A stretch of DNA of 58,517 nucleotides, filler included, from Platydemus manokwari (Eukaryota), in NCBI GenBank assembly GCA_037951405.1. It is 5 parts of 5 records of this genome, joined end to end, with 100 filler letters (N's around TTAATTAATTAA, not from the genome) between each part and the next. Parts side by side here need not be neighbours in the genome. Positions count along the whole stretch, not along the records: positions 49,103 to 58,517 come from JBBMOY011252652.1; 4 more parts are not named here. One strand, written 5' to 3'. This document shows, one piece after another, positions 2,000 to 58,517 of this stretch (the first letter of the stretch is position 1; the number at the start of each line of letters is the position of its first letter). A model generated the notes under the pieces. The model ran no database searches. It was not told where the DNA came from and worked only from the letters and a program-made list of their open reading frames with translations. The translations under genes were made by a program, and so were the position numbers.

Positions 2000-4330
2000 A
2001 ACTATTGAAACCCTCTAAGACCAGCATCTCGGTTTATAGGAGTCGTCACTCATTTCCGAGCCAAAGAATCACAAAAAACAGTGCAAGCGATCATTGTTCA
2101 ATATCACCTTGGGGAGCTAATTATCCGCTCCAAAAACCCCCTCGACATTACGTGTGACATTTCCACAATGAAGAATACCAAGTCTAAGAAGAAGACTTAG
2201 TTGGGCAATGGGATGAACAATTATGTCGAAATGAAATCTTTAACCAGCACATTGTCGTAGGATACCAAGTCAACGATATCATCAAAGCTCTCGACATTCC
2301 CCACGAGGAAATACTCGGCATAAATGACCTCGCCAAAGCCGAATGTCTCGTCGATTACAAGCTCGACCTACGAAACCCGATCAAACTGAAATATCAAACA
2401 GAAAGTTTTATCCAACTTCCAACCTAAGGAAAGCCACACCTTTTGAGTAATTCAGAGGGGAGTGGAAACCATGCGAGCCATTTACAAATAACTCGACAAA
2501 AAATTGGTCAACCCATCTATCATTACAGCCACCCAACTCACCAAGGAAAAAGAAGCTGAAAAGGAACAGCATTCCCCTAGCCATCAGCTCATAAGCCAAG
2601 CCTGACAGTAAGTCAAAATTCCAGCCCGCCGATAAGGCAGAAAGCTAAACAAATCCGGCAACTATAGTCAAACCAACTAACACCTCACCATCTTTACACC
2701 AGAAGAACAAATATATCTAACCACTGACGAAAAAGATCGCCACACACCGGTGGAACAAAGAGATTCAAAATTCCTATGCCGAAACCGAAAAAAGCTGCGG
2801 AAAATAGTGAGATTGCGACCCAGCGACAGCTTAGCTATGTCCAAGTTCGACAACCCAATAAATTTTCTGGTACATACACCCGAAATAATCCGAGTAGAAG
2901 GATCCCGATATTATTCCATCGGTATTCTCTATATCAATCTAAAGGCAATCAACCTAAACCGCAAATTTCGAAACTGCTGAGAAAAACGGGAGTGGTCGAT
3001 TGACAGTTATTAACATTAATCGGCGTTGAAGCCACTATTGTAATGACATTTTTATTTTATCCGGCACTGTAGACACCATTTTATTGATATGTTATTGACA
3101 TTTTTATTCGTCATTGTAGTCACTATCCTGTATGTAAACAGAAACACTATATTAACCTGTTAATCATCTTTCTGTCACAAATAACTTCTCAGTCCTCACT
3201 TTCCTGTTCACATTTTTCGGGACGAAAAAACCTAAGAGGGGGGAGATATGTTAGGATCCAATTACGATTAACTTAAGAAATCTGTATTAGTCATCACACC
3301 TACCGGAAATTATATAACCTAAATATAATCGAAAATTCCAAAAATAAACATGACGTAATTTCTAAATTAATTACAAACCTAAAAATGGAATTTAAAAATT
3401 ACATTATTAGAAATAAATTCACAGATAGGTAAAAATAGAATTAAGTCATGACAAAAATAGAAAATTCATGATTGCCTAAGACAACAATAAGACACAGTAT
3501 ATAAGACCAACGATTTTTCGAACAAATGGCAATAGAATACAGGCACAAAAATACCGGTATTAAAATTACTTGAAAAGCTAATTACAATGAGCTGATTGTC
3601 AGAATAGCTATCGCTAATCCGAACAGTTACAAGCAAGAGAATCATTAGTCAGTGTGACAGATCAAGTACGATCCGAGAATCATGTACCAGTAAACAGCAG
3701 AAACTCCAGAACGAGCTGAATTATAACCAGTAGAGGTATACACCAAGTTGTTTAATAGTTTCATATCGTGTCGAAAAATTCGGTATTAAGTAATTGAACC
3801 TTCTTTTGCCTCCCACCTTTTTGTCATAGTTTTCATTCATTATACGGTTCACCCGTATCGTGGAACTTACCTTCTGGTTGAGTCAACACTTCGCCAGCTG
3901 TGTTCACACAATTATAGTAATCAACTTTGTAAATTATTTATTGTGATTATTTAAATTATACGTTTCAATTCATTTGTTTTATTGTTATTTATTATATATC
4001 TATTGATTTACAAATCGCAACCTAAATTACATCACACGAAACACAACAGATTATTTGGAGTCCGATCTGTAAACAACGAACGAGCAACTCGAAAATTAAT
4101 CATACCTCACCCCATTACAAATAACCAAAAAGTAATATATAAAAATCCAATAGTTTATATAATCCAATTGAAACCACCGGTAAATGTGAATTATATTTTG
4201 AATACCAAATTAATAATTATTAAACCGTGCTGCTAGTACTCCAGAACTAAATAAAACGACCACTTGAAGACAACTATCTTAAAACTTTACATGTGTTCAG
4301 AGATAAATTTAGCTGTTACCCAGGTAATAG
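2000..4330 (+). mobile_element. 3' end of a Ty3/gypsy-like LTR retrotransposon: GC-richer decayed internal region, polypurine tract and 3' LTR starting at 3249 (right end uncertain)
   Basis: ttttcgggacgaaaaaacctAAGAGGGGGGAGATA|TGTTAGG is a classic PPT (3234-3248) followed directly by TG. The upstream 1.2 kb is locally GC-richer with broken ORFs. Confidence 0.7.
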
Positions 4331-26563: not shown

Positions 26564-29311
26564 AATTACATCTTTGTCTCTTCGATCATACATTGGAACT
26601 TGAATTACACCATTTAATATGATATCAATATTATCGTTTGATTCTTTGCATTGTATTGATAACAGCCCTCCAAAAGCAAAAGAGAATGTTTTAAGTTCAT
26701 TTATCTTTAAACTTATACTCATTTTACTCCAAGGCCATTTATACCATGTTTCTCTATTAAAGGTGTCAAATAAATGATAATTCACATATAGATAACATGT
26801 TTCTGATTTCGATTTCGTGATTATTACAGACACATCCTTTCCCGGAGAAATGTATAAACCGAGTTGTGCAACCTCATCAGGAAATTTGAGATTTAGTTTC
26901 ATTCTTACTGAAAGATATTTGATATTATTAGATTGTACTATTCCAGGATAAAATGATACACCTGGTGCTATGAATTTATTTCCAAGGGGATTAAGTAACA
27001 ATATATTTATCAGAGCTATCATTTTTTTATCATTATTATTCGATATTGGATTGTCTAAACATGGAATGAGATATCTTACGTGGTGTAAATGAGCTTCAAA
27101 AAGTAATCTAATATATTTTTTAATATAATAATATTCCTTTTCTTCGAATTGATCTTTCAAAATATTTTCTTTCATAATATTAGAAATAATGTCTGAAACA
27201 GAAATCGCATTAGTTAGATTTGTTGAAGCATAACTCAATAAAACAACAAATGGGACAGTTTCTATTTCTAATGTTTTTGCAATCGTTATTTCTTCATTAA
27301 AATACTGATTTAGTGGCCAAATTCCTGATGCTGCAAATATTGATCGCAACTCAGAATGAAAGAGATCTTCTGTGTAACGATTATAAGCCCATGGTTTGAT
27401 TCCTATTATTATTCGAAGTCCACATTTCACCAAATTTAAAAGTAAATCAATAGCTTGTCTTCCTATTTTGTCATGAGGATTCCATATGAGAGGTGTAGTG
27501 AAAGATTGACCAGAACGCCTTTTAAGATCCAGTGTTTCTAGTAGGTTCACAGTCAATGTCAAAGGTGAAGTATTTTTTATTCCATAAACTAATTGAAAGA
27601 AATCTTTCAATTGACTGTGGAAATCTTTATTTACATAACCTTCAGAACCCATGAAACCTATTCGGCCTTGACCAATTTCTGATATAGCAAATATCACTTT
27701 ATTTTTACTTGTGACAGCATATGGGATAACATTATCTCCTAAAAGAAGAAAATTTCCAAAATTATTTATTGTAGGTATAGTTATGTTCTTGTTGTATCTC
27801 CTTCGTAGATATAAGTCTACCTAAATGAATTTTAAATCAATTTTAAATCAATTTTAAATAGCTTTGATTAATAAAAACTTAAAATAATTGTTCCATTATC
27901 GATACGTTATATTTTTATTTTATTAATAAATTCTATAAATATTTATTATTCATCTTTGGAATGAGAATTAAAAAGTAGAAATTCACCCGATATATACATT
28001 CATTAAAGATTTTATTGTATACTCCAAGTAATTTTTACCTCATAGATACCTTATTCATCACCTAAAAAATATAAATTACTTGGCTTTTATTATTGTAGAT
28101 TAAAAATACTCTTTAAATTATCGATAAGATTATCAGCAACTTTTGATTTGAAGTTGGCATATTATACAATTTATTATAAGAATTACTTTACATATTAAAG
28201 ATATTTAACTTTTCAAAATTATGTAAAAATCTTTTTCTTACTTTTTTATTATATTCTTCGAATACTTTTTTTGCTTCCCACTTTACTTCATATATTGTTC
28301 CCAGCTCATAAGCAGTTCTATAGCCAGTATGTGAAATAGGAGAAATGAAAATAAATGTTCGTAATGGTGATGTACAATTGTAAACAAGATGGATTTGACA
28401 TCTTCCTTCACTAATATCCGTTAATTGACAGAACTGAAATTCATTGAAATCATTCTGACATTTTAGATTGTAATCAGTGGACCACAGTGATGTTTTGCTT
28501 TCAATATCCGTGTCCCACAATTCTAAAATCAAATATTAATACTGGAATTACAAATAGAACGCAAAACTCTTATCTATCGAAACGAAGAAAATAGCGAATT
28601 GATAAACATTGTTTAATGTGATAAATTTTGTATTTCGTGGTATGTTTTTCAAATAATCTTCACCACCAAAATATTCGTTTTGTTTCAAAGTTTCTGTAAA
28701 AAATATTTACTTAAATATTCACGAGACAAGATTTCATCCACCTTTAACACATATGGGAACGTGACATTGCTCAGATATCGAATAACTCGTATCAATATAG
28801 CACCATGGACCAGATAATGAATTCGATGGATTTCGGCATTTGTTTCCAGCATCAATAATATTATTATCAGGAAATAAATTATCAGTATATAGAAATTGAT
28901 TATTCCATGGTTGACATTGCTTTTCAGATTTCGTAACATGTATATTACCGAAATATTCTACACCGGATTCGGTATCTTTACACCAATGTCGTTCTAATAT
29001 TAAAATCAATCAATAATTGATGATTTTGATATATATACCCTTATAACAGAAAGGAATATCACAATATTCCCACTCGATTGTATTTCTATCTATGAAACAC
29101 CAAGGACCATTTGGAAAACTTGTGGGATTTCTACAATACTCAGTGTTCAGGATCGAATCAATATTGTGATAATTATATATCATTTGATTTGATAGTAGAA
29201 GTTGATTCATTCTTCTCTTTGTCCAAGGGAGACATTTGTGTCTATATATCGTTTTGCTGACTTTACCAGCATATTCTCTACCGTGAGAAGTCAATTTGCA
29301 TTTTTCAATTT
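26564..29311 (-). CDS. Kringle-kringle-unassigned domain-TCAF/FAM115 (M60-like peptidase family) multidomain protein; exons 29311-29039, 28993-28742, 28693-28568, 28522-28242, 27820-26564 (3'-truncated by linker)
   Basis: Two complete kringles (C...G.EY.G.V..T.....C.PW...YCRNP...GPWCF...EYCDIPFC and the second equivalent). Frame-preserving GT-AG introns of 45, 48, 45 and 421 bp. Last exon has TCAF motifs FLLLGD..IP...VIFAISEIGQGRI, IIIGIKPWAY, APGVSFYPG, GLYISPG, W.KWP, FGGLLSI and I.LNGV.QVPMY. Confidence 0.8.
28742..28993 (-). CDS. Kringle domain exon 2
   Basis: WCKDTESGVEYFGNIHVTKSEKQCQPWN...NKCRNPSNSLSGPWCY...EQCHVPIC, with six Cys and phase 1-1 borders. Confidence 0.92.
29039..29311 (-). 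CDS. Kringle domain exon 1
   Basis: KCKLTSHGREYAGKVSKT...KCLPW...YCRNPTSFPNGPWCF...WEYCDIPFC, with phase 1-1 borders. Confidence 0.92.
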
Positions 29312-49102: not shown

Positions 49103-50397
49103 AAGGCTATCAACACATTTCTCCCAACGACCTAAAAGTTTATTTATTCCAACTTAAAAAAAATCTTGCTCTCGAGAATATTTGATGTGGAAATAGGTTT
49201 CACTAAGATTTTGTATGATTTTTGTAATTGCAAGAACAATGTGAGGATATTTAAAAGTCAATGTCAAACCAATTGTAGATTAAAAAGATTATAGTATATT
49301 TAAATTTTTAATTTTTTTTAAAATAATATTTTTATTTATAAAATAATCGCATTAAAATCTTCACACATGTTATTGAGAACAAAATATCTGGGTGTTTATA
49401 TGATGATTATTATTCAAAATTTCAAAAACAATCGAATTATACAAGAAGAAAATGTGAGATAAGAAATGGAATACATCATGACAATCAGAGAAGACCCAAT
49501 TAAAAAAAATTAAAAAATTTAAAAAATGTCCACAATGCATATAATATTATTGCGTATCAAATGATAAAAATTATTATCTTTCAAATAGAGTGTGTCAATT
49601 TATTAAAAATATAAAGTATTTAATCGTCATGTTGCGATAGCCCATATTTGTGTTGACTATTTTTGCATTTTAATAAAATTTCGTATTTTCCAATATTGAC
49701 AAATATGTCACCGCGTGTTAGTGATTTGGAAATTAATGTTAGAATCTGAGTAGATGTGTGAGTATCAATGAATTCCTATAGGCGAGATAAAAATTTTATT
49801 AGGTTGATGACTTAATTAAATTTTATTTCTTAAAATATTGGCTTGATGATGAGTTATTTATTTAAAATTACCACTTATGTCATTACATCATAAATTGTGA
49901 AACATTCGAAAGTTAAATACTTGATCTTTGGTGCCATTTATTTTTATTTATGGTAATTTCATTTTGTACTGCCATTTTAAATGTTGTAAAGTTGCTCAAT
50001 ATATAACAAATCAATTCATTTATAATCGATAAGAATATTGTAATGAGTTTTTTGGAATCAGTTAATTGATAGATTAATATCGAAATTATTATTATTCTAT
50101 AAAGGGTACAAGTTAGGCAAAACTATAAATTCATGGAACATTTCAGTAATAATGTTTTTGTAAATCAATATTTTATACGATACTGCTAAAGTGAAATAAT
50201 GAGAGATGAAAAACAACGATGGATTACCTTATAATGAAGATTTTTGTAAAAGCTAATGAATTTTTAATGGTTCCGTGACTTGAAACAGTATTATAAATCT
50301 GAAGAAAGTTAATTTTAAATAGCTTAAGATTATTCTAATATATCAGTAAATTTTCTGTGACAATCAATTCAAGCAAATATTATTTTATGATTTAAGG

Positions 50398-50910
50398 CAG
50401 TGATTCCCAAACTTTTCGGGTGTACACCCCCTTTTCAGTATAAATATCAGTTAGCGCCCCCAAACTAACCCACATCAATTTTTTTAAATTTTTAGTACCA
50501 ATTTTTAAAAAAAAATCTTAAGGTTACTCTTTTGCTACTTAATAAATTCTCGTAATATCATAACAAACTTACCTTTCTTTTAGTTTTATTTCAGTTAATC
50601 ACTGTGGGGAATCCCAGAAATACTACCACTCTACTACCAGACTTAGGTGTTGCCAACGACAAAGTGCACAAGCAGTAATAATGAATGCACGATTACACAT
50701 ACTTCAATAAAAAATAGTGAGAAAGTACAGTACTTTGTTTAAAAACAAATTAAGCTTTTTGAACAAACGAGATACATCAAAACTTTTAATAATCATTTTC
50801 TTGCATTCTTACAGTATTATCTCCCCCAAATGAGCTTGTGTTCACCACCGACCCTCTGGATCCTTGCAGCGCCTACCAGGAGGTGGTAGCGCTCACTTTG
50901 GGAATCACTG
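50398..50910. mobile_element. Complete non-autonomous hAT (Charlie-type) MITE, 513 bp
   Basis: TIRs CAGTGATTCCCAAA / TTTGGGAATCACTG. Perfect 8-bp target-site duplication ATTTAAGG at 50390-50397 and 50911-50918. Confidence 0.95.
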
Positions 50911-51579
50911 ATTTAAGGCATTAAAATTATTATCATTTATTGATTTTTACTTAAAAAAGTGAAATACTTGAAAAGAAATTTCGTATCCTACTTTAATAAG
51001 TTGGAAATTGTTGTGATCGACATTGAATACTCTAAAGGTAGTGTAAAATTGGACTTTATCGTTTGTTTTAAGAGTTTCATGAATTTGATTTTTATTTTCA
51101 TCAAATCTTTTTAGTACCATAAAACGTTTGTTCATGTTCACTTATGTAAGTATGTCGTATTTAATATAAATTAGATCGATTGCAATAAAAGACATGGCGG
51201 TGGCCCTTAAAGGAAGTCATCCAAAAATCTTGAATATTTAGGTGAAGAAGAAAATGTTAAATATTTTAATGCTAATTAAAGATATTAGAAGTTGTTTTTC
51301 ATCTGATTTCTCAATAATCATAATATATACAATAAATTATAGACAAAGGTGGCTGCTGTGCGTCATAAGATCTATAATCAACATGGAATCTCTCCTCATT
51401 AATATTTTATAAATTTATTTGATCTTGTTTTGATTATTTATATTTAACTATTATTTTTATATTTATTTAATCTTTTGCAACACCAATTCAGAGAACAAGA
51501 TTTAATCTATTTTACTCATCGATTCGAATTTGTTATTGTTATCAATATTGATAATTGATCGTATCATTGAATTTTATAG

Positions 51580-51865
51580 ATTTGATAAAGTTGAAAAACA
51601 GAAACGCAGTGCATTTTCTTTCATGCCATTTGGAATGGGGCCTCGTAACTGTGTTGGTATGAGGTTTGCATTACTGGAAGCTAAGTTGGCTCTAGCTTGC
51701 TTGTTAAAAAACTACAAAATAGTGCCATGTGCTGAAACACCGGTGAGATATCTCATATTGTCAAGATTGATTATAATCATTATATTCTAGAAAACATTGA
51801 CATTTAATACAGGTGGACTGAGTAGTACGAAGGAGAAAGTCATCATCAGATTAGAAAAGAGATAG
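51580..51865 (+). CDS. Cytochrome P450, clan 3 (CYP3A-like), last two exons 51580-51742 and 51791-51865
   Basis: Heme motif FMPFGMGPRNCVGMRFALLEAK. A 48-bp intron follows CAETP (the CYP3A-type position). Final exon KTLTFNTGGLSSTKEKVIIRLEKR*; AATAAA at 51894. Confidence 0.92.
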
Positions 51866-53499
51866 ATATCATCGATGTATTTCGACGAATTTTAATAAAT
51901 TAATTAACTTGTTTTATTAGTGTTAAAGAAATCTGATTTAATTATTAATTTTTTAATTATCAATCAATATATGTTTAATATCAAATGAGAAGAAATGAGA
52001 AGTCACTTTTTCGAAAACCGTTTTAGTTTGTGTACAAATTTCATACATAAGATAGAATAATATTTTCAGATCGATGTACGCACTTTTGATTTTAAAAATT
52101 TAAGCATTTCAACGGCCGATATATAAAAATTAAAAGGTAATGTAACTTTATATTGTAATTGATATTATTGTATTTACTTTTCATTTTAATCATGCTCCTA
52201 TGGAATTAGATGATAGGATCGAAATCGATAGATTTTCGTGTCCGAGGAATATGATAGAAAGAGGTCAAATTGTTCCATTTTATTAGAATAATCTAACGCT
52301 AAACAGGAATTCGTTACCAAAAAAATTCATTACAACGATTACACACAAACACTCATACATACATGTGATGTGAGATGGCAGAGAAACATTCAAGAGATTT
52401 TCGAATGATAACATTCTGTGATAGAACACATCTGTAAACGTTTAAAATATTATAAATTATCAACAAAGTAATTGTTTTATTAAAGAACACAGAACACTGT
52501 TAAACTCATGTCTTTAAAATCCTCTCAATTTCTTCATATATTCAATGTGTTTTGATTTTATTGAATCTGGGAACTTGATAACCACTTAACTATGGGGATC
52601 CATCGTACCAATACTTTCTCGAAAATCTTTAAATCCTATTTGTCATTCTAACTCTAATAATGATCGCTATCCGTTCTAGTAGCAACATCTCAATTTTGTT
52701 GAGCATGATTTCGGACGATGTCTCTAAATAGTATTTTCCATCTAGCTTCTGAGTGTAATTTTTTTTTAATTTTCAAAAGGTCTTTCAAATGACCAAAATT
52801 TTGCTTTGTTCTGCTGAGTGATACTGAAACGAAATTTCATTATTTTTTTGATCCCCAGAGATGTTAATCATATCTATTGCCATATGAAATTGTTAGAGAT
52901 CTCACTTGAATTAATAAAAACGGATAAATTTAACTTTATAGCTTCATAATTTCATTAATATAAAAAATAAATCAAGCATTTGAAATTATTAATTGAATAG
53001 CTTGAACTATTTAAAAAGTTGCTGACCTTTTAATTTAGGCCTCAAATATATAAACAATTTCTTACATTTATTTGCAAAAGTTTTTAAAAATATTTTTAAA
53101 TTGCCAAGTAATAATAAACGTTTTATTAATGAAAAATACATAATCAATTAAAATATCAAACAACAATGAACCACTGTAAACATATTAAAAATTGCGGACC
53201 AATTTAGTTAAATTTACATATGAATTTTATGAAGAAAATCAGTCATCATAAAAGAGAATTTTTTGAATTGAAATTCTTGTGAAATTCGTTTTTGGATTGC
53301 CAAAAAATTTTTTTGGATGCTAAACTATAGTTGAGACAAATCGATTGCTAAATTTTTAGTTAAAATTATTCTGAAATTTGACTGAATTTTCCAGACTGAA
53401 CATTTGCAGCAAAAATTAATAAAGTAAAAATTATCATAGAGCCAATATAACCATACAATCTCAACGAAATCAACATTGGACGCTACTAGTCGCCTCTAC

Positions 53500-55800
53500 A
53501 CGGGATAGTGATGAATCCTAATATGAAGATAAAACCAAAGCAAAGAGGTTGTGTAACACATTCATGAACGTAAACTAACTTTGGATAAACTCATAGTTAA
53601 AAAGAAACCTTTACGATAACAAATAACGTCAGTTACAATAAAATAATTTTGACTGTGATCCATTAACATGTAACTACTATTATTGAATTGCTAATAGTCA
53701 ATTGTGCCTAGACAAGATGCTAGAACCATTAGAAAAAAATGCAAATGAAAATTTTTCAAAGATTCGATTAACAACGTAACTGGGGTATGTCCAGCTAGCT
53801 GCAGAAGATCAGAATGATCATAAATTTTACAAAACAAGGCACATGATAACAAAAAGGAATTGGCAGAGCCCTCTAACTTTTTGAAGTCGAGGATATCCTA
53901 AAATTCCTGTACTTCAAAAACATGGGAATTATTTTTTCCCATCTCGGATGATATCTAAATGCTGAATACTACTTGTAACAAAAATCTTAGCTCAACTTCT
54001 GAACCATAGAGTTTATTATTTGGATGATGAAAAAGACTAATTTCCACAATAATCAGGGTAGAAATATTTCCATAATATTATGGAGCAAAGAAGGACTCAA
54101 AGAAGGACTCGATCTTCGAACATTGATAAAGGCAAAGAAAGAATAACAGCCAGTGTGAAATTTCAATAGCTGGCTAAAAATACATTTGAAATTAGAAAAT
54201 CATTATCAGGAGGACCTGTTAATTATTTCACAAATTAAATATTAGACGAAATGTTTATCAAATATTGTGAATTCATTCACCGTGTCTTCACAATTAAATC
54301 ATCAAGTAATCCATACTTAGGCAGAGCAAATGCAGAAAAAATAGGTGAAACGGATTAGAAACTAAGGATAATGTTTAACCACTATCCATCTGCTGCCTCT
54401 GAATTAGGTACCCAATACACAAAAGTTGGCTAGCTAGTTACCAAAAATAACTTTAAAAACATTTCAAGGAGAAATCTTCCTAAATGCAAAGATTCGTGCA
54501 CATAAGAATGTTGAAATGATTGCTCATTGTAGAAACTTCCTTAAAGAGCTACACACACTGCAACTAGAGAAAACAAGATTAACAATAGATACATATATGC
54601 AGACCTATGAAAGCAAATCAAAGACAAGAATTTCACAAAGCATGTACAATATCACTGACACTCACACTTATGACATAGGGTCATTAACTACAAGTCACGT
54701 ATTGGAGACCTATTCCTCAGCAAGATTGCTGTTATAAAGTTTTCAAAACTGTTGTGGATACATTTGAAGAAACAATTTGAGAAAATTTTCCCTCATCATT
54801 CTAGAAGTGCGCTATCCGGGAATGAAATTCTCGTTGAAGTTGTATAATATAAGCGTAGGAATATTTGACGAAATGGGAACGGTAATGATAAAATTAGAAA
54901 AATACATTTATAGTAATAACAGATATGAGAGTCTTTGCGTTGTTTGTGAAACCTGAGAAGACCTTTTGGACAATAAATTGCTACATCACGTGCAATAGAT
55001 TACTGTAGTTCGATGTATTGATAAAAAAATATCTGAAAAGTTATTGATGTACCAAAATATTTATTCTCAGATAATTTTTATTCAACCGAGTCAAATGACT
55101 GTTGTGTACTACGGAACGTGACTGAGGGGAACACTATACATTCGATCATTCAAGTGTATTAATTGTTAATAAGCATAGTTTGTTTAAACTTTTTGAAGTG
55201 AATAACCAAGTTAAGACAATATAGGAAACAATAGAATTGGACAATATGCATATTCAGTAAAGTGAAAGGAGTAAAACACGGTGGATTAAAGTTATATGGA
55301 GTATCAAATATGTGTAAAAGAAAATACATACCATTGCTTTTTTTATTTTTACCAAAGTTGAGGTAAACGTTAAAATTAATCAAAGCCTTACGATCAATGA
55401 TTTAGTACGTAAAGTGCTGAGACAGTGTTTAATATCGATAGTACCAATTAAACTCGACAAATCAAATCAGAAATGGATGCTATAACACGTACTTAGGAAC
55501 TAATAGTCCAACGTTGTGAAAAATAGTGAGATGGGTGGTATACAGAAAATCATTTTATAAAGTTTAATCCTAAAAACACTTTTTATCTTACCGCAAATCA
55601 TTTATTTTATTAATACTCTATCAACGTGACAGAGTAATGGATATATTGGCCAAGCAAATTGTTAACAGTACGGACTACAAATTCCACATTAAAGGTTCCC
55701 CAAGGAAATATGAAAAAAACAAAGAAAGTGGTAGAAATATGGGAAGAAGATATTCATACTAAAGCAACTGGAAAACGTAGATAGAATTGATAGTATAACT
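53500..55800 (+). mobile_element. Highly decayed non-LTR retrotransposon remnant
   Basis: A-rich broken frames with LRQ (~GLRQG) and NHLFY (~NHLLY.DD)-like remnants near 55410-55620. Confidence 0.3.
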
Positions 55801-57200
55801 CGAGTAGCACACATATCAATGTTTTTGAATAACAATTTGTTATAAGTAATGTATGTTTTAAGATTACAGCAATGACACTCTAATATTATTAATAGTTTTC
55901 ACTAGAAATTATAATTTAAACAAATCGCTTAAAGAATCAACCCTTTCAATATAGTTCATACTTCACTATGATGCTTTTTAAACCTCACCATAAAATAAAG
56001 CTTTGCAACTCAATTATTTGAAATACATGAAACAGTTTCCTCGAATATTTCGTTATAATAAATAATAATAAGATTATTTAATATTATTGAACGATAATTT
56101 TTAGTTATCTTGATATTAATAGCTCTACAATGAGCGATAAACATCACACCTGGAACCAGGATGCTGATAAAATAAACCTTCTGTGTAAAAGCGCTATTAT
56201 TGTTCTTCTTAAAGGAACCAGATCAATATAGCTGATTACCACTTATGGTGCCAGTGTTTTCATTCATTTGATCCTAAAAAATTGAAAGCAGCATTAAATC
56301 GATTATCCCGAGAGACGTTTATATCAATAATCGTAATGAAAACACGGAGTCAAGTAATTTTGAATGAAAAGTAATTATTATAATGATATTTTTAATTATT
56401 CTAAAATTCACTGGCTACTAGCAGAGTTGCAGAAGCTTTGACTAAATAATAGGCTTTTAACAAGATCTAGTAAGGTGACAAACCTTATTTTCCAATCATG
56501 ACATGCGCGCTTGGTTTTATATCTGAATTATGTTAATCAATAACACTCGATTATTCACAGAATAAATACATATTTGTGGTTGATTCAAAGCCCTTTGATT
56601 TGATACCATTTAAGCTGTATCCAATAAAGAACGAGAATTTGGTAATAATTCGATTTGGCATATATATAGTTATGATAACATATTAATCGCTCGATTAGAC
56701 AAGTATTGAGAAAGATAATTGAGAAATAACTTTATCTTAGGAGTTTTTAAATTATAATTAGGTATCAAATATAATAATTTTATTTATTTATAATAAATGT
56801 ATGTACCAGGACTGTTTTACTAAATGATGAATGATAAACTTGTATCATTTAAGAATGTTCAAAGCATCTCTAAGCGGATAAATTTTGATTGTCAATTAAG
56901 GGTCATCAAACAGGAGAACAAAAATGATGACATTATTTGATATTCAATAAACCAAACTTATCTATAATAATAGATCTCTCTTACTTAACTAAAAAATTTC
57001 AGTTGTCAAGTCGAAAGAGATTCTTGCTGAAATCTATGGTATTTATTTGATACCTTAGCTAATAAGCTAATACGACTTATACGAGACAGATCTCATCAAT
57101 ACACATTTAAATTCCTGACATTGTGAGACTTTGCATGGTAGTTATTGAAACAAATAGTTGTCAACCAATCAAATTAAGAGCTAAAAAATGTATTTTATCA

Positions 57201-58123
57201 ATGGATGTGATTCTCATTTCACTTTCATTCATTTACTTGAATGTTATTCTTGCTCTCTACATCTGTATAATTGGTATCGATTGTGAAGACAATTTTTATT
57301 TTGAAACAACCGGTTGTGTTTACAATCGATTGCAATCAATTTCTCTCGAATCACTTATAGAATGTGCAATCCAATGTCAAATCAACAGCTGTAAAGCGTT
57401 CAATTTCAACAATTCGATGTGCAATTTATACGAATTTCGTGAGATATGCCAATCTGATACAAAGTGTCCCAATGTAACGATATTTATCAATAATCGATTT
57501 AATAGCATTGTAAATTGAATTAGCAATATAATGATAAATATTGATTAATATTTTTATTTCAGTTTGAAAGTGATTCGTCGAGTGTGGCTTTTCAATTATT
57601 CAATCATGTCAATTATCGATATGGTCATGGATCTCCATCAATATATAACATTATCAATGCTAGTCAAGCAATGCCGATTATCTTTAGTAAAGGTAAAAGA
57701 ATAATTGTAGCAATCGGAAGAAATAAATTGAGTAAATTGATTGTGTATCCTAAAACTGAATTGATTGTTAATTTAAACAAATATAATAATAAATATGGAC
57801 AGCTGGCAAACAATTTCGTGACATACTTAACTGGAGGAAATTGTACCGATTATCGATATTGTTATCATTCAATCGAGACCTACAAGAAATATATTGGAAT
57901 TCGAAATCAAGTCTTCGGGATTTCGAAGAAATTGCGAATTAACACAAAGGATTTGACAGGCATTATCATCAATAACACATGGCATGTCATTGTTAGCGGT
58001 ACATTTTGGACTGATAATATTATTAATGAAACACAAAATCTGGTAAATCATTTTGGCATTCGCATAACAAAGGAGTGGGGTGTTACAGATTGGTATATCA
58101 AGGAAAATATTTGTAAAATTTGA
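57201..58123 (+). CDS. Putative secreted protein: signal peptide + PAN/apple domain + TCAF/FAM115 N-terminal-like domain; exons 57201-57509 and 57563-58123
   Basis: Hydrophobic N-terminus; SLIECAIQCQINSCKAFNFNNSMCNLY is the PAN Cys pattern. A 53-bp phase-0 intron (GTAAAT...TTTCAG) keeps frame. Exon 2 GSPSIYNIINASQAMPIIFSKGKRIIVAIGRNKLSKLIVY...LANNFVTYL resembles the TCAF repeat (P..L.+...AFPV....G.V++AA..YG.GR+VV...L.NAV.WL). Confidence 0.65.
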
Positions 58124-58517
58124 ATTGAATGGCAGCAAATATTAAATTGAAATACAATCTGTTTACGTCATGTCGCTGATGTTAATAAATATTGTTGCGT
58201 CATTGACCGCTGATTACCATTTTATAATAATAAATTAATATTTTTAATTATTATTTTTAAAATTAAATTATCATTCAGCCAATGAGGAGTCTAGCTATGA
58301 CATTTGCACAATAAAACCCTGATGACAGCTTGCAGTGGTGATAATACTAATTATATGGGTGTTCTTGATTTCTTGTTTTGAAATTCTTTTCGAAGATTGT
58401 TGGTGATAGATTACTTGCGATATCATTACGAATAAGTTTCAATTTTTGATTATCATTTAAATTATTATTAAAATTTTTATGATCTTCAATCTTTTCTTTA
58501 TTAATTTCTGAATTATT

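What the first reader, a model, noticed from the sequence alone, without database searches (positions are those of the whole stretch)
57201..58123. Second, unlinked gene: signal peptide + PAN/apple + TCAF-N-like domain, suggesting an expanded shuffled family
Seen: on a different contig, a PAN exon is spliced in frame to a domain resembling the start of the TCAF exon at 27820 (P-S/N, hydrophobic, P-hydrophobic, K.I+AI...++ pattern). PAN and kringle are the two N-terminal modules of plasminogen/HGF. Inference: two such fusions among five short contigs imply a large lineage-specific family of PAN/kringle-TCAF proteins built by exon shuffling. This member appears to stop before the peptidase domain, so it could be a non-catalytic partner or decoy.
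Basis: partly seen in the sequence, partly recalled or inferred. Interest (0 to 1): 0.72.

Follow-up and report, generated by a model that had tools for sequence, protein, structure and literature searches.

The report
Secreted PAN plus TCAF-N-fold protein gene
This is an intact two-exon gene for a small secreted protein that joins a PAN/apple module to a domain with the fold of the non-catalytic, glycopeptide-binding N-terminal domain of M60-like mucinases (IMPa, TCAF) but has no peptidase part; it belongs to a multi-copy family that current sequence-based annotation does not recognise.

Summary
Exon 1 (57201-57509) encodes a hydrophobic leader and a cysteine-rich module. Exon 2 (57563-58123) follows a 53-nt GT..AG phase-0 intron and encodes a 186-aa domain.

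Pfam, NCBIfam and PDB sequence searches gave nothing significant for either exon. An exhaustive phmmer search found 32 relatives of exon 2 (best E 7e-43). An AlphaFold2 model built on them (pLDDT 88, pTM 0.87) matches only one solved structure: IMPa of Pseudomonas aeruginosa, residues 76-295 (Z 13.6, 180 residues aligned; next chain Z 3.6). In the ESM Atlas it matches clusters carrying TCAF_N (PF27016) or IMPa_N_2 (PF18650) at TM 0.69-0.72.

A profile of three leader modules hits only PAN domains in the PDB (HGF, MIC4, plasminogen; best E 0.002).

The same leader + PAN + short intron + domain layout recurs in every relative where the upstream DNA could be read. All relatives stop just after a conserved NIC motif, so there is no peptidase.

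Contigs of the only public run holding this DNA contain many diverged copies.

Repeated exon shuffling and a decoy role are not shown. The function is inferred to be non-catalytic extracellular glycoprotein binding.

The parts
57201..57275 (+). Start codon and N-terminal hydrophobic leader (residues 1-25), a probable signal peptide
   Evidence: Hydropathy >2 over residues 1-28. Relatives have short typical leaders at the same place. No SignalP was run.
57282..57509 (+). Divergent PAN/apple-like cysteine-rich module (Cys at residues 28, 39, 55, 59, 64, 74, 83, 89), reaching the end of exon 1
   Evidence: The profile of three such modules (A2) hits only PAN domains in the PDB: HGF N domain E 0.002, MIC4, plasminogen. 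PAN_1 is sub-threshold in relatives at 17.6 and 14.8 bits against a cut-off of 21.4. 27 of the 30 nearest Atlas clusters are PAN_1, mostly from Rotifera. The window copy itself has no Pfam hit.
57510..57562 (+). 53-nt phase-0 intron, GTAAAT...TTTCAG
   Evidence: Read directly from the sequence. The same position holds a 48-nt GT..AG intron in L001 and separates the exons in L003 and L004. There is no RNA evidence.
57563..58123 (+). Exon 2: 186-aa alpha/beta domain with the fold of the IMPa N-terminal domain and TCAF_N, then TGA
   Evidence: 32 relatives by phmmer. AF2 model pLDDT 88, pTM 0.87. Foldseek IMPa E 1.8e-6. VIA-align Z 13.6 over 180 residues to IMPa 76-295, with the next chain at 3.6-3.9. 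Atlas TCAF_N/IMPa_N_2 clusters at TM 0.69-0.72.
58184..58189 (+). AATAAA, a possible polyadenylation signal 61 nt after the stop
   Evidence: Sequence only; not tested.

Best explanation
A functional two-exon gene encodes a secreted, non-catalytic two-module protein of about 289 aa. The N-terminal part is a signal peptide followed by a divergent PAN/apple module. The C-terminal part is a 186-aa alpha/beta domain that is a remote structural homologue of the N-terminal non-catalytic domain of M60-like glycoproteases (Pfam IMPa_N_2 in bacterial IMPa, TCAF_N in TCAF proteins). In IMPa that domain carries an exosite that binds an O-glycopeptide. The peptidase half is absent here and in all relatives. 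The protein therefore most likely works as an extracellular binder of glycoproteins or mucin-like chains, with two binding modules in tandem. Shown: the gene structure, the family, the fold match, the absence of a peptidase, and multiple copies. Inferred: secretion, ligand class, and a rotifer as host organism.
For: The gene and splice are supported. The family has 32 representatives at E<=1e-3 and 4 at <=1e-30, plus 4 more from the profile word search. The fold model has pLDDT 88. IMPa is the only PDB match among 48,161 representative chains: Z 13.6, rmsd 3.5, 180 of 186 residues, chain residues 76-295, with the next chain at Z 3.6. Seven of the eight Atlas rows with TM>=0.67 carry TCAF_N or IMPa_N_2. 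PAN is supported. There is no peptidase: relatives end 0-17 residues after the conserved NIC motif, and the window protein has no HExxH. The IMPa N-terminal domain (PF18650) is non-catalytic and binds a glycopeptide at an exosite (PMC9915616); it has also been called a proline-recognition domain (PMC10010678). Conserved Cys94/Cys100, a co-varying optional Cys pair (12 with both, 15 with neither, 2 with one, 0 with the other) and six sequons fit an extracellular protein. For copy number, 227 contig pieces at >=80% likeness lie on 1.6 kb. Up to 15 contigs carry the same variant letter at one site in the exon 2 core, and up to 36 at the 3' end of exon 1. The listed diverged contigs (81-86% alike) have depths of 12.5-15.8, like the unique flanks at about 11-13.
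Against: No sequence-level link to IMPa_N_2 or any other Pfam or NCBIfam family was found, and identity to IMPa in the structural alignment is 8-9%. Homology therefore rests on a predicted model. The window's own exon 1 has no PAN hit. There is no expression evidence. Conservation of the IMPa exosite residues could not be examined. Secretion was not tested with a predictor. The summed contig depth is not a copy number, and the run could contain more than one organism.
Confidence: 0.7

Rival explanations
1. Decoy or regulator. The peptidase-less protein competes with, or docks onto, full-length TCAF/M60-like enzymes of the same animal or of microbes, blocking or steering their access to mucin substrates.
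For: It has the same fold as the exosite domain of IMPa and TCAF_N. It lacks a catalytic part. The family is expanded and fast-evolving, with 24-45% identity among members, as seen for proteins in host-microbe conflict.
Against: No partner is known. No full-length M60-like gene could be examined in this piece. This reading is not distinguishable from simple ligand binding with present data.
Confidence: 0.15
2. The fold resemblance is convergent or generic. Exon 2 is an unrelated lineage-specific Rossmann-like alpha/beta domain with some other role, such as a structural or eggshell/cuticle protein or a small-molecule binder.
For: No sequence-profile similarity to IMPa_N_2. Identity is 8-9%. Weak matches to P-loop and other alpha/beta folds exist at Z about 3-4.
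Against: The IMPa match covers 180 of 186 residues at Z 13.6, while nothing else among 48,161 chains reaches Z 5. Independent Atlas models of TCAF, archaeal and bacterial TCAF_N proteins and IMPa all match at TM 0.69-0.72, then the values drop to 0.45.
Confidence: 0.1
3. A decaying or silent copy of a multi-copy family (a pseudogene), with no function of its own.
For: Many diverged copies occur in the same run. No RNA run holds the stretch. This copy lacks the C-terminal tail and the optional Cys pair found in 12 relatives.
Against: Both exons are open. The splice signals are intact. All nearly invariant residues (T90, C94, C100) and the NIC motif are kept. Fifteen other members also lack the optional Cys pair, so this is a subfamily trait and not decay.
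Confidence: 0.05

Closest known systems
N-terminal non-catalytic domain of IMPa (PA0572) of Pseudomonas aeruginosa, Pfam PF18650 IMPa_N_2 (PDB 5KDV, 5KDX, 7JTV)
   Same: Same fold over the whole domain: Z 13.6, rmsd 3.5, 180 residues aligned, IMPa residues 76-295. The IMPa domain is non-catalytic and holds a glycopeptide-binding exosite (PMC9915616).
   Different: Identity is 8-9% and there is no PF18650 hit. IMPa continues into helical and M60-like catalytic domains, whereas this protein stops. Here the host is a eukaryote, the gene has an intron, and a PAN module comes first.
TCAF1/TCAF2 (TRPM8 channel-associated factors) N-terminal domain, Pfam PF27016 TCAF_N
   Same: Atlas models of TCAF homologues match at TM 0.72 over 174 residues.
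   Different: TCAF proteins are about 920 aa and also carry M60-like_N and Peptidase_M60. They act on TRPM8 trafficking inside the cell (PMC4284226). This protein is about 289 aa, has a leader and a PAN module, and has no peptidase part. Sequence membership in PF27016 could not be tested.
Short TCAF_N-only proteins ('putative TCAF2-like', 211 aa, chordates) and bacterial or archaeal TCAF_N proteins with other partners (He_PIG, M60-like_N)
   Same: The domain exists on its own or with varied partners. TM is 0.69 by query and 0.62 by target for the 211-aa cluster.
   Different: None of the listed clusters combines it with PAN. The family found here carries no Pfam annotation at all.
PAN/apple N-terminal modules of HGF and plasminogen, and the apple domains of Toxoplasma MIC4
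   Same: The only PDB sequences hit by the profile of the leader modules, with the shared core ...C..C....C.aF.f....C.lY.
   Different: The hits are below Pfam's PAN_1 cut-off. The module is followed by a TCAF_N-fold domain and not by kringles or further apple domains.

Membership tests
TCAF_N / IMPa_N_2 fold domain (PF27016 / PF18650) | Three-dimensional fold of the IMPa N-terminal domain / TCAF N-terminal domain | tested here: met
   The AF2 model (pLDDT 88) matches IMPa 76-295 at Z 13.6 with 180 residues aligned, and the next chain is at Z 3.6. Atlas TCAF_N/IMPa_N_2 clusters match at TM 0.69-0.72.
TCAF_N / IMPa_N_2 fold domain (PF27016 / PF18650) | Sequence-profile match to PF18650 IMPa_N_2 | tested here: not met
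   No hit for the window domain at E<=10, nor for any of the 33 family members at E<=1. The family profile does not find IMPa in the PDB at E<=10.
TCAF_N / IMPa_N_2 fold domain (PF27016 / PF18650) | Sequence-profile match to PF27016 TCAF_N | not testable with these tools
   The Atlas annotates with Pfam 38.1. The highest accessions seen in the local Pfam copy (24,736 models) were PF24xxx, so it probably lacks PF27016. No TCAF sequence was available for hhalign.
TCAF_N / IMPa_N_2 fold domain (PF27016 / PF18650) | Glycopeptide-binding exosite residues as in IMPa (7JTV) | not testable with these tools
The exosite is known only from PMC9915616.
M60-like peptidase / full-length TCAF (PF13402 with PF17291) | M60-like_N beta-sandwich and catalytic domain with HExxH downstream of the N-terminal domain | tested here: not met
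   TGA lies at 58121, two codons after the conserved NIC. Relatives end 0-17 residues later. There is no HExxH in the product and no PF13402 or PF17291 hit.
PAN/apple domain (PF00024 PAN_1) | Pfam PAN_1 score above the gathering threshold (21.4 bits) | tested here: not met
   The window exon 1 has no hit. Relatives P0001:1-100 score 17.6 bits (E 0.0034) and P0024:1-98 score 14.8 bits.
PAN/apple domain (PF00024 PAN_1) | Conserved cysteine core and sequence pattern shared with solved PAN domains | tested here: met
   All 17 PDB sequences hit by profile A2 at E<=10 are PAN/apple proteins: HGF N domain E 0.002, MIC4 0.0031, plasminogen 0.74. 27 of the 30 nearest Atlas clusters are PAN_1.
PAN/apple domain (PF00024 PAN_1) | PAN fold (beta-sheet with a helix, disulfide-locked) | not tested

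The most novel reading that the evidence does not exclude
This is a lineage-specific (probably rotifer), strongly expanded family of secreted proteins. The glycopeptide-binding exosite domain of M60-like mucinases/TCAF has been cut loose from its peptidase and fused once to a PAN module. The result would be a new class of animal lectin-like or mucin-binding proteins, or of decoys against microbial mucinases, diversifying under host-microbe or surface-coat selection.
Probability: 0.3. Interest if true: 0.6.

Novelty: new variant of a known kind. Interest (0 to 1): 0.5.

Why it matters
The N-terminal domain of TCAF proteins and of IMPa-type mucinases is barely characterised. Its only functional clue is a glycopeptide exosite in one bacterial enzyme. 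A family in which this domain occurs without any peptidase, secreted and paired with a PAN module, offers a natural system for studying what the domain binds on its own. It also shows that structure-based comparison recovers a relationship that Pfam, NCBIfam and PDB sequence searches all miss. Dozens of such genes are therefore currently left as 'hypothetical' in animal genomes and soil metagenomes.

Tried and rejected
**Sequence and family searches**
- Pfam on both exons at E<=10 gave nothing. NCBIfam gave only noise.
- PDB sequence searches with the single exons and with the domain profile gave nothing meaningful.
- Word-index protein searches with exon 2 and exon 1 found no homologue. With the family profile the word search returned only 7 proteins, so it is useless as a census.
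- The language-model search for exon 2 gave only weak scores (<=0.88) to unnamed bacterial clusters.

**Structure**
- The single-sequence AlphaFold model was unusable at pLDDT 30 and was discarded.

**Related loci and context**
- P0024 has no contig on record.
- Four ENA loci had no DNA available.
- No RNA run holds the stretch, so the splice junction and expression remain unverified.

**Literature**
- The two PNAS papers on the IMPa structure are not held.
- A search for 'proline recognition domain' returned unrelated papers.

**Readings considered and rejected**
- That the gene continues past 58123 into a peptidase exon. The stop position is conserved in relatives.
- That the organism is a ciliate with TGA as its only stop codon. 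Both exons are free of in-frame TAA/TAG, and the neighbouring P450 exon has a haem-loop motif that, from general knowledge, resembles animal CYP3-clan enzymes.

**Not done**

Full report
**Scope**

Only the piece 49103-58517 was used. It has about 29% GC and no N. The two exons of the model were always searched separately by reference. No search or fold was run on the joined product. One local script concatenated the two translations, only to number the glycosylation sequons.

**1. The observation**

An ATG at 57201 opens a frame that runs to a TGA at 57516-57518. A GTAAAT donor begins at 57510 and a TTTCAG acceptor ends at 57562. The frame that opens at 57563 continues in the same phase to a TGA at 58121-58123.

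The model is therefore:
- exon 1, 57201-57509 (103 codons)
- a 53-nt phase-0 intron
- exon 2, 57563-58120 (186 codons)

Exon 2 is the longest open frame in the piece.

Exon 1 starts with a hydrophobic stretch. Windows of 19 residues starting at residues 1-10 average above 2 on the Kyte-Doolittle scale. After it come eight cysteines in a pattern like ...LIECAIQCQINSCKAFNFNNSMCNLYEF....

Six N-x-S/T sequons lie in the product. AATAAA sits 61 nt after the stop. An alternative in-frame donor (GTAACG at 57474) exists. No RNA run holds the stretch, so the junction itself is inferred.

**2. Sequence searches on the window's own exons**

These gave nothing:
- Pfam at E<=10 had no family for either exon.
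- NCBIfam gave only noise.
- PDB sequences had nothing for exon 2 and one chance hit for exon 1.
- The word-index protein search found no homologue for exon 2 or exon 1.

**3. The family**

The family scans and the word search left the protein open, so the exhaustive phmmer search was run with exon 2. It found 32 cluster representatives at E<=1e-3, 17 at <=1e-10 and 4 at <=1e-30. The best was P0001 (311 aa, E 6.9e-43, 45% identity, matching its residues 108-295).

Most hits are 110-200 aa. These are the domain exon alone, called as a bacterial-style ORF on short metagenome or Logan contigs.

Two hits are long, and both have a leader and a Cys-rich module in front of the domain:
- P0001
- P0024 (291 aa), the only member held in a protein-sequence database (UniParc UPI000603172D); it carries no descriptive name there

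A profile word search added four more members.

The alignment A1 (33 sequences) shows a conserved core: NNFVxYLTxGxCxxYxxCY, NxWHxI..G.FW, LYGI and a terminal NIC. T90, C94 and C100 are nearly invariant. None of the 33 members matches any Pfam family consistently. The family profile finds nothing in the PDB by sequence.

**4. Gene structure in relatives**

- L001 is the contig of P0001. It has GTGATG...CTTTTCAG, 48 nt, exactly at the exon 1/exon 2 boundary.
- L003 and L004 (ENA and JGI metagenome contigs, 27-29% GC) each have a separate upstream frame. It encodes a short leader plus the same Cys-rich module and ends ...NVTIFINxR.... A GT follows, and after a few dozen bases the domain exon begins.
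- L002 is cut at its 5' end but shows the end of the same module.
- L005 has too little upstream DNA to tell.

Wherever it could be read, the layout is leader + module + short phase-0 intron + domain. This was four loci with DNA plus the annotated P0024. I saw no other N-terminal partner and no kringle.

**5. The C-terminal domain**

A single-sequence AlphaFold2 model was useless at pLDDT 30. With A1 as input the model has mean pLDDT 88.1 and pTM 0.87. It is an alpha/beta fold.

| Search | Best match | Next best |
|---|---|---|
| Foldseek against the PDB | 5 matches at E<=1e-3, all IMPa of Pseudomonas aeruginosa (best 1.8e-6) | unrelated chains from E 0.088 |
| VIA-align second look | IMPa residues 76-295, Z 13.6, rmsd 3.5-3.6, 180 of 186 residues, 8-9% identity | Z 3.9 |
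| VIA-align over 48,161 representative chains, Foldseek-independent | IMPa Z 13.6, the only chain with Z>=5 | Z 3.6 |
| ESM Atlas by shape | 8 rows at TM (by query) 0.67-0.72; the 7 carrying TCAF_N or IMPa_N_2 score 0.69-0.72 | TM 0.45 |

The Atlas rows at TM 0.67-0.72 are:
- chordate TCAF homologues (PF13402 + PF17291 + PF27016 TCAF_N)
- archaeal He_PIG + TCAF_N proteins
- bacterial M60-like_N + Peptidase_M60 + TCAF_N proteins, and a separate bacterial TCAF_N + M60-like_N cluster
- a 211-aa chordate TCAF_N-only cluster
- two IMPa clusters (IMPa_N_2 + IMPa_helical)
- one ArsP_1 cluster that carries neither domain

At the level of sequence it is not. PF18650 does not hit. PF27016 is probably newer than the local Pfam copy and could not be run.

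**6. The N-terminal module**

The window's exon 1 has no Pfam hit. The equivalent parts of P0001 and P0024 hit PAN_1 below threshold, at 17.6 and 14.8 bits against a cut-off of 21.4.

A profile of the three modules (A2) hits 17 PDB sequences at E<=10. All of them are PAN/apple proteins: HGF N domain (best E 0.002), Toxoplasma MIC4 apple domains and plasminogen.

By language-model features, 27 of the 30 nearest Atlas clusters are PAN_1 (score 0.93), with Rotifera the commonest phylum on record. I take this as a divergent PAN module.

**7. No peptidase**

The window protein ends two residues after the conserved NIC. Relatives end 0-17 residues after it. There is no HExxH in the product and no M60 or M60-like_N hit. 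The family is therefore constitutively peptidase-less, not truncated in this one copy.

Twelve members have both a Cys in the LYGIC motif and a Cys in a short C-terminal tail. Fifteen have neither. Two have only the first and none has only the second. This looks like an optional disulfide. The window copy belongs to the group without it.

**8. Copy number**

One public run holds the stretch (0.93 of words; no RNA run). It is probably the source of the assembly and so is not independent.

Its contigs were laid at >=80% likeness:
- 227 pieces fall on the 1.6-kb stretch: 13 at >=99%, 20 at 95-99%, 57 at 90-95% and 137 below 90%.
- Unique flanks have a summed depth of about 11-13. The exons reach 60-560, and about 2,900 at the 3' end of exon 1.
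- Up to 15 contigs carry the same variant letter at a single site in the exon 2 core (57822), and up to 36 at the end of exon 1 (57476).
- The listed diverged contigs, 81-86% alike, have depths of 12.5-15.8, like the flanks.

This fits many paralogues in one genome. The tool warns that summed depth is not a copy number, and the run could hold more than one organism.

Independently, single metagenome samples hold several members that share only 24-43% identity with the window domain:
- ERZ27256860: P0002, P0003, P0008, P0028
- ERZ27257134: P0004, P0005
- JGI 3300031718: P0014, P0033

**9. How it most likely works**

The literature held here says that IMPa's N-terminal domain (PF18650) is non-catalytic. 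In one crystal structure it binds a glycopeptide at an exosite (PMC9915616). It has also been described as a proline-recognition domain that may direct the enzyme to O-glycosylated P-S/T motifs (PMC10010678).

From general knowledge, PAN/apple modules mediate protein or carbohydrate binding. Examples are HGF with heparin and MIC4 with galactose.

The best-supported reading is a secreted, non-catalytic protein with two binding modules that recognises extracellular glycoproteins or mucin-like chains. The architecture and fold are shown. The ligand and the secretion are inferred.

Rivals:
- a decoy or regulator of M60-like/TCAF enzymes (not distinguishable at present)
- a merely convergent alpha/beta fold (unlikely given the gap between Z 13.6 and 3.6 and the consistent Atlas hits)
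- a silent copy (unlikely, as the frame, splice signals and conserved residues are intact)

**10. Organism**

The organism was not identified. The following point to an animal, probably a rotifer:
- AT-rich DNA
- introns of 48-53 nt
- a neighbouring cytochrome P450 exon (PF00067, E 5.6e-17) whose haem-loop motif resembles, from general knowledge, animal CYP3-clan enzymes
- rotifer PAN clusters as the nearest neighbours
- relatives in metagenome assemblies

This is inference.

**11. Verdict**

The family is large. Its uniform architecture argues for one ancestral PAN-domain fusion followed by duplication, and against repeated exon shuffling.

Relative to what is known, it is a new variant. It is a peptidase-less, PAN-fused, secreted branch of the TCAF_N/IMPa_N_2 fold, invisible to the sequence models that could be run here.

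Noticed in passing
window 51506-51787 (+), coding part about 51578-51742: An isolated cytochrome P450 exon with the haem-binding loop (FMPFGMGPRNCVGMRFA). It hits Pfam p450 at E 5.6e-17, profile positions 387-441 of 462. No other P450 exon of >=40 codons was evident upstream in the piece. It is either a gene of many small exons or a fragment.
   Followed up: partly
window 58412-58517: The last ~100 bases of the piece are covered by contigs summing to a depth of about 2,000-3,700, against about 11 in the unique flank, with many loose ends. This is a high-copy repeat or a low-complexity AT-rich element. An open frame on the minus strand (58350-58517) runs off the piece and has no Pfam hit.
   Followed up: no
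window 57440-57493 (3' end of exon 1): This 54-base stretch, which encodes ...ICQSDTKCPNVTIFIN..., has by far the highest summed contig depth of the gene (about 2,900) and up to 36 variant contigs. That is several times more than exon 2. The PAN-end motif may therefore be shared by many more genes than those carrying the TCAF_N-fold domain.
   Followed up: no
alignment A1, the LYGIC motif and the C-terminal tail: A Cys in LYGIC and a Cys in the C-terminal tail co-occur: 12 members have both, 15 have neither, 2 have only the first and 0 have only the second. This suggests an optional disulfide that splits the family into two structural subtypes.
   Followed up: partly
L004 2228-2368: A long (AAT)n / poly-Asn-coding simple repeat lies about 250 nt downstream of the family member on a soil-metagenome contig.
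   Followed up: no
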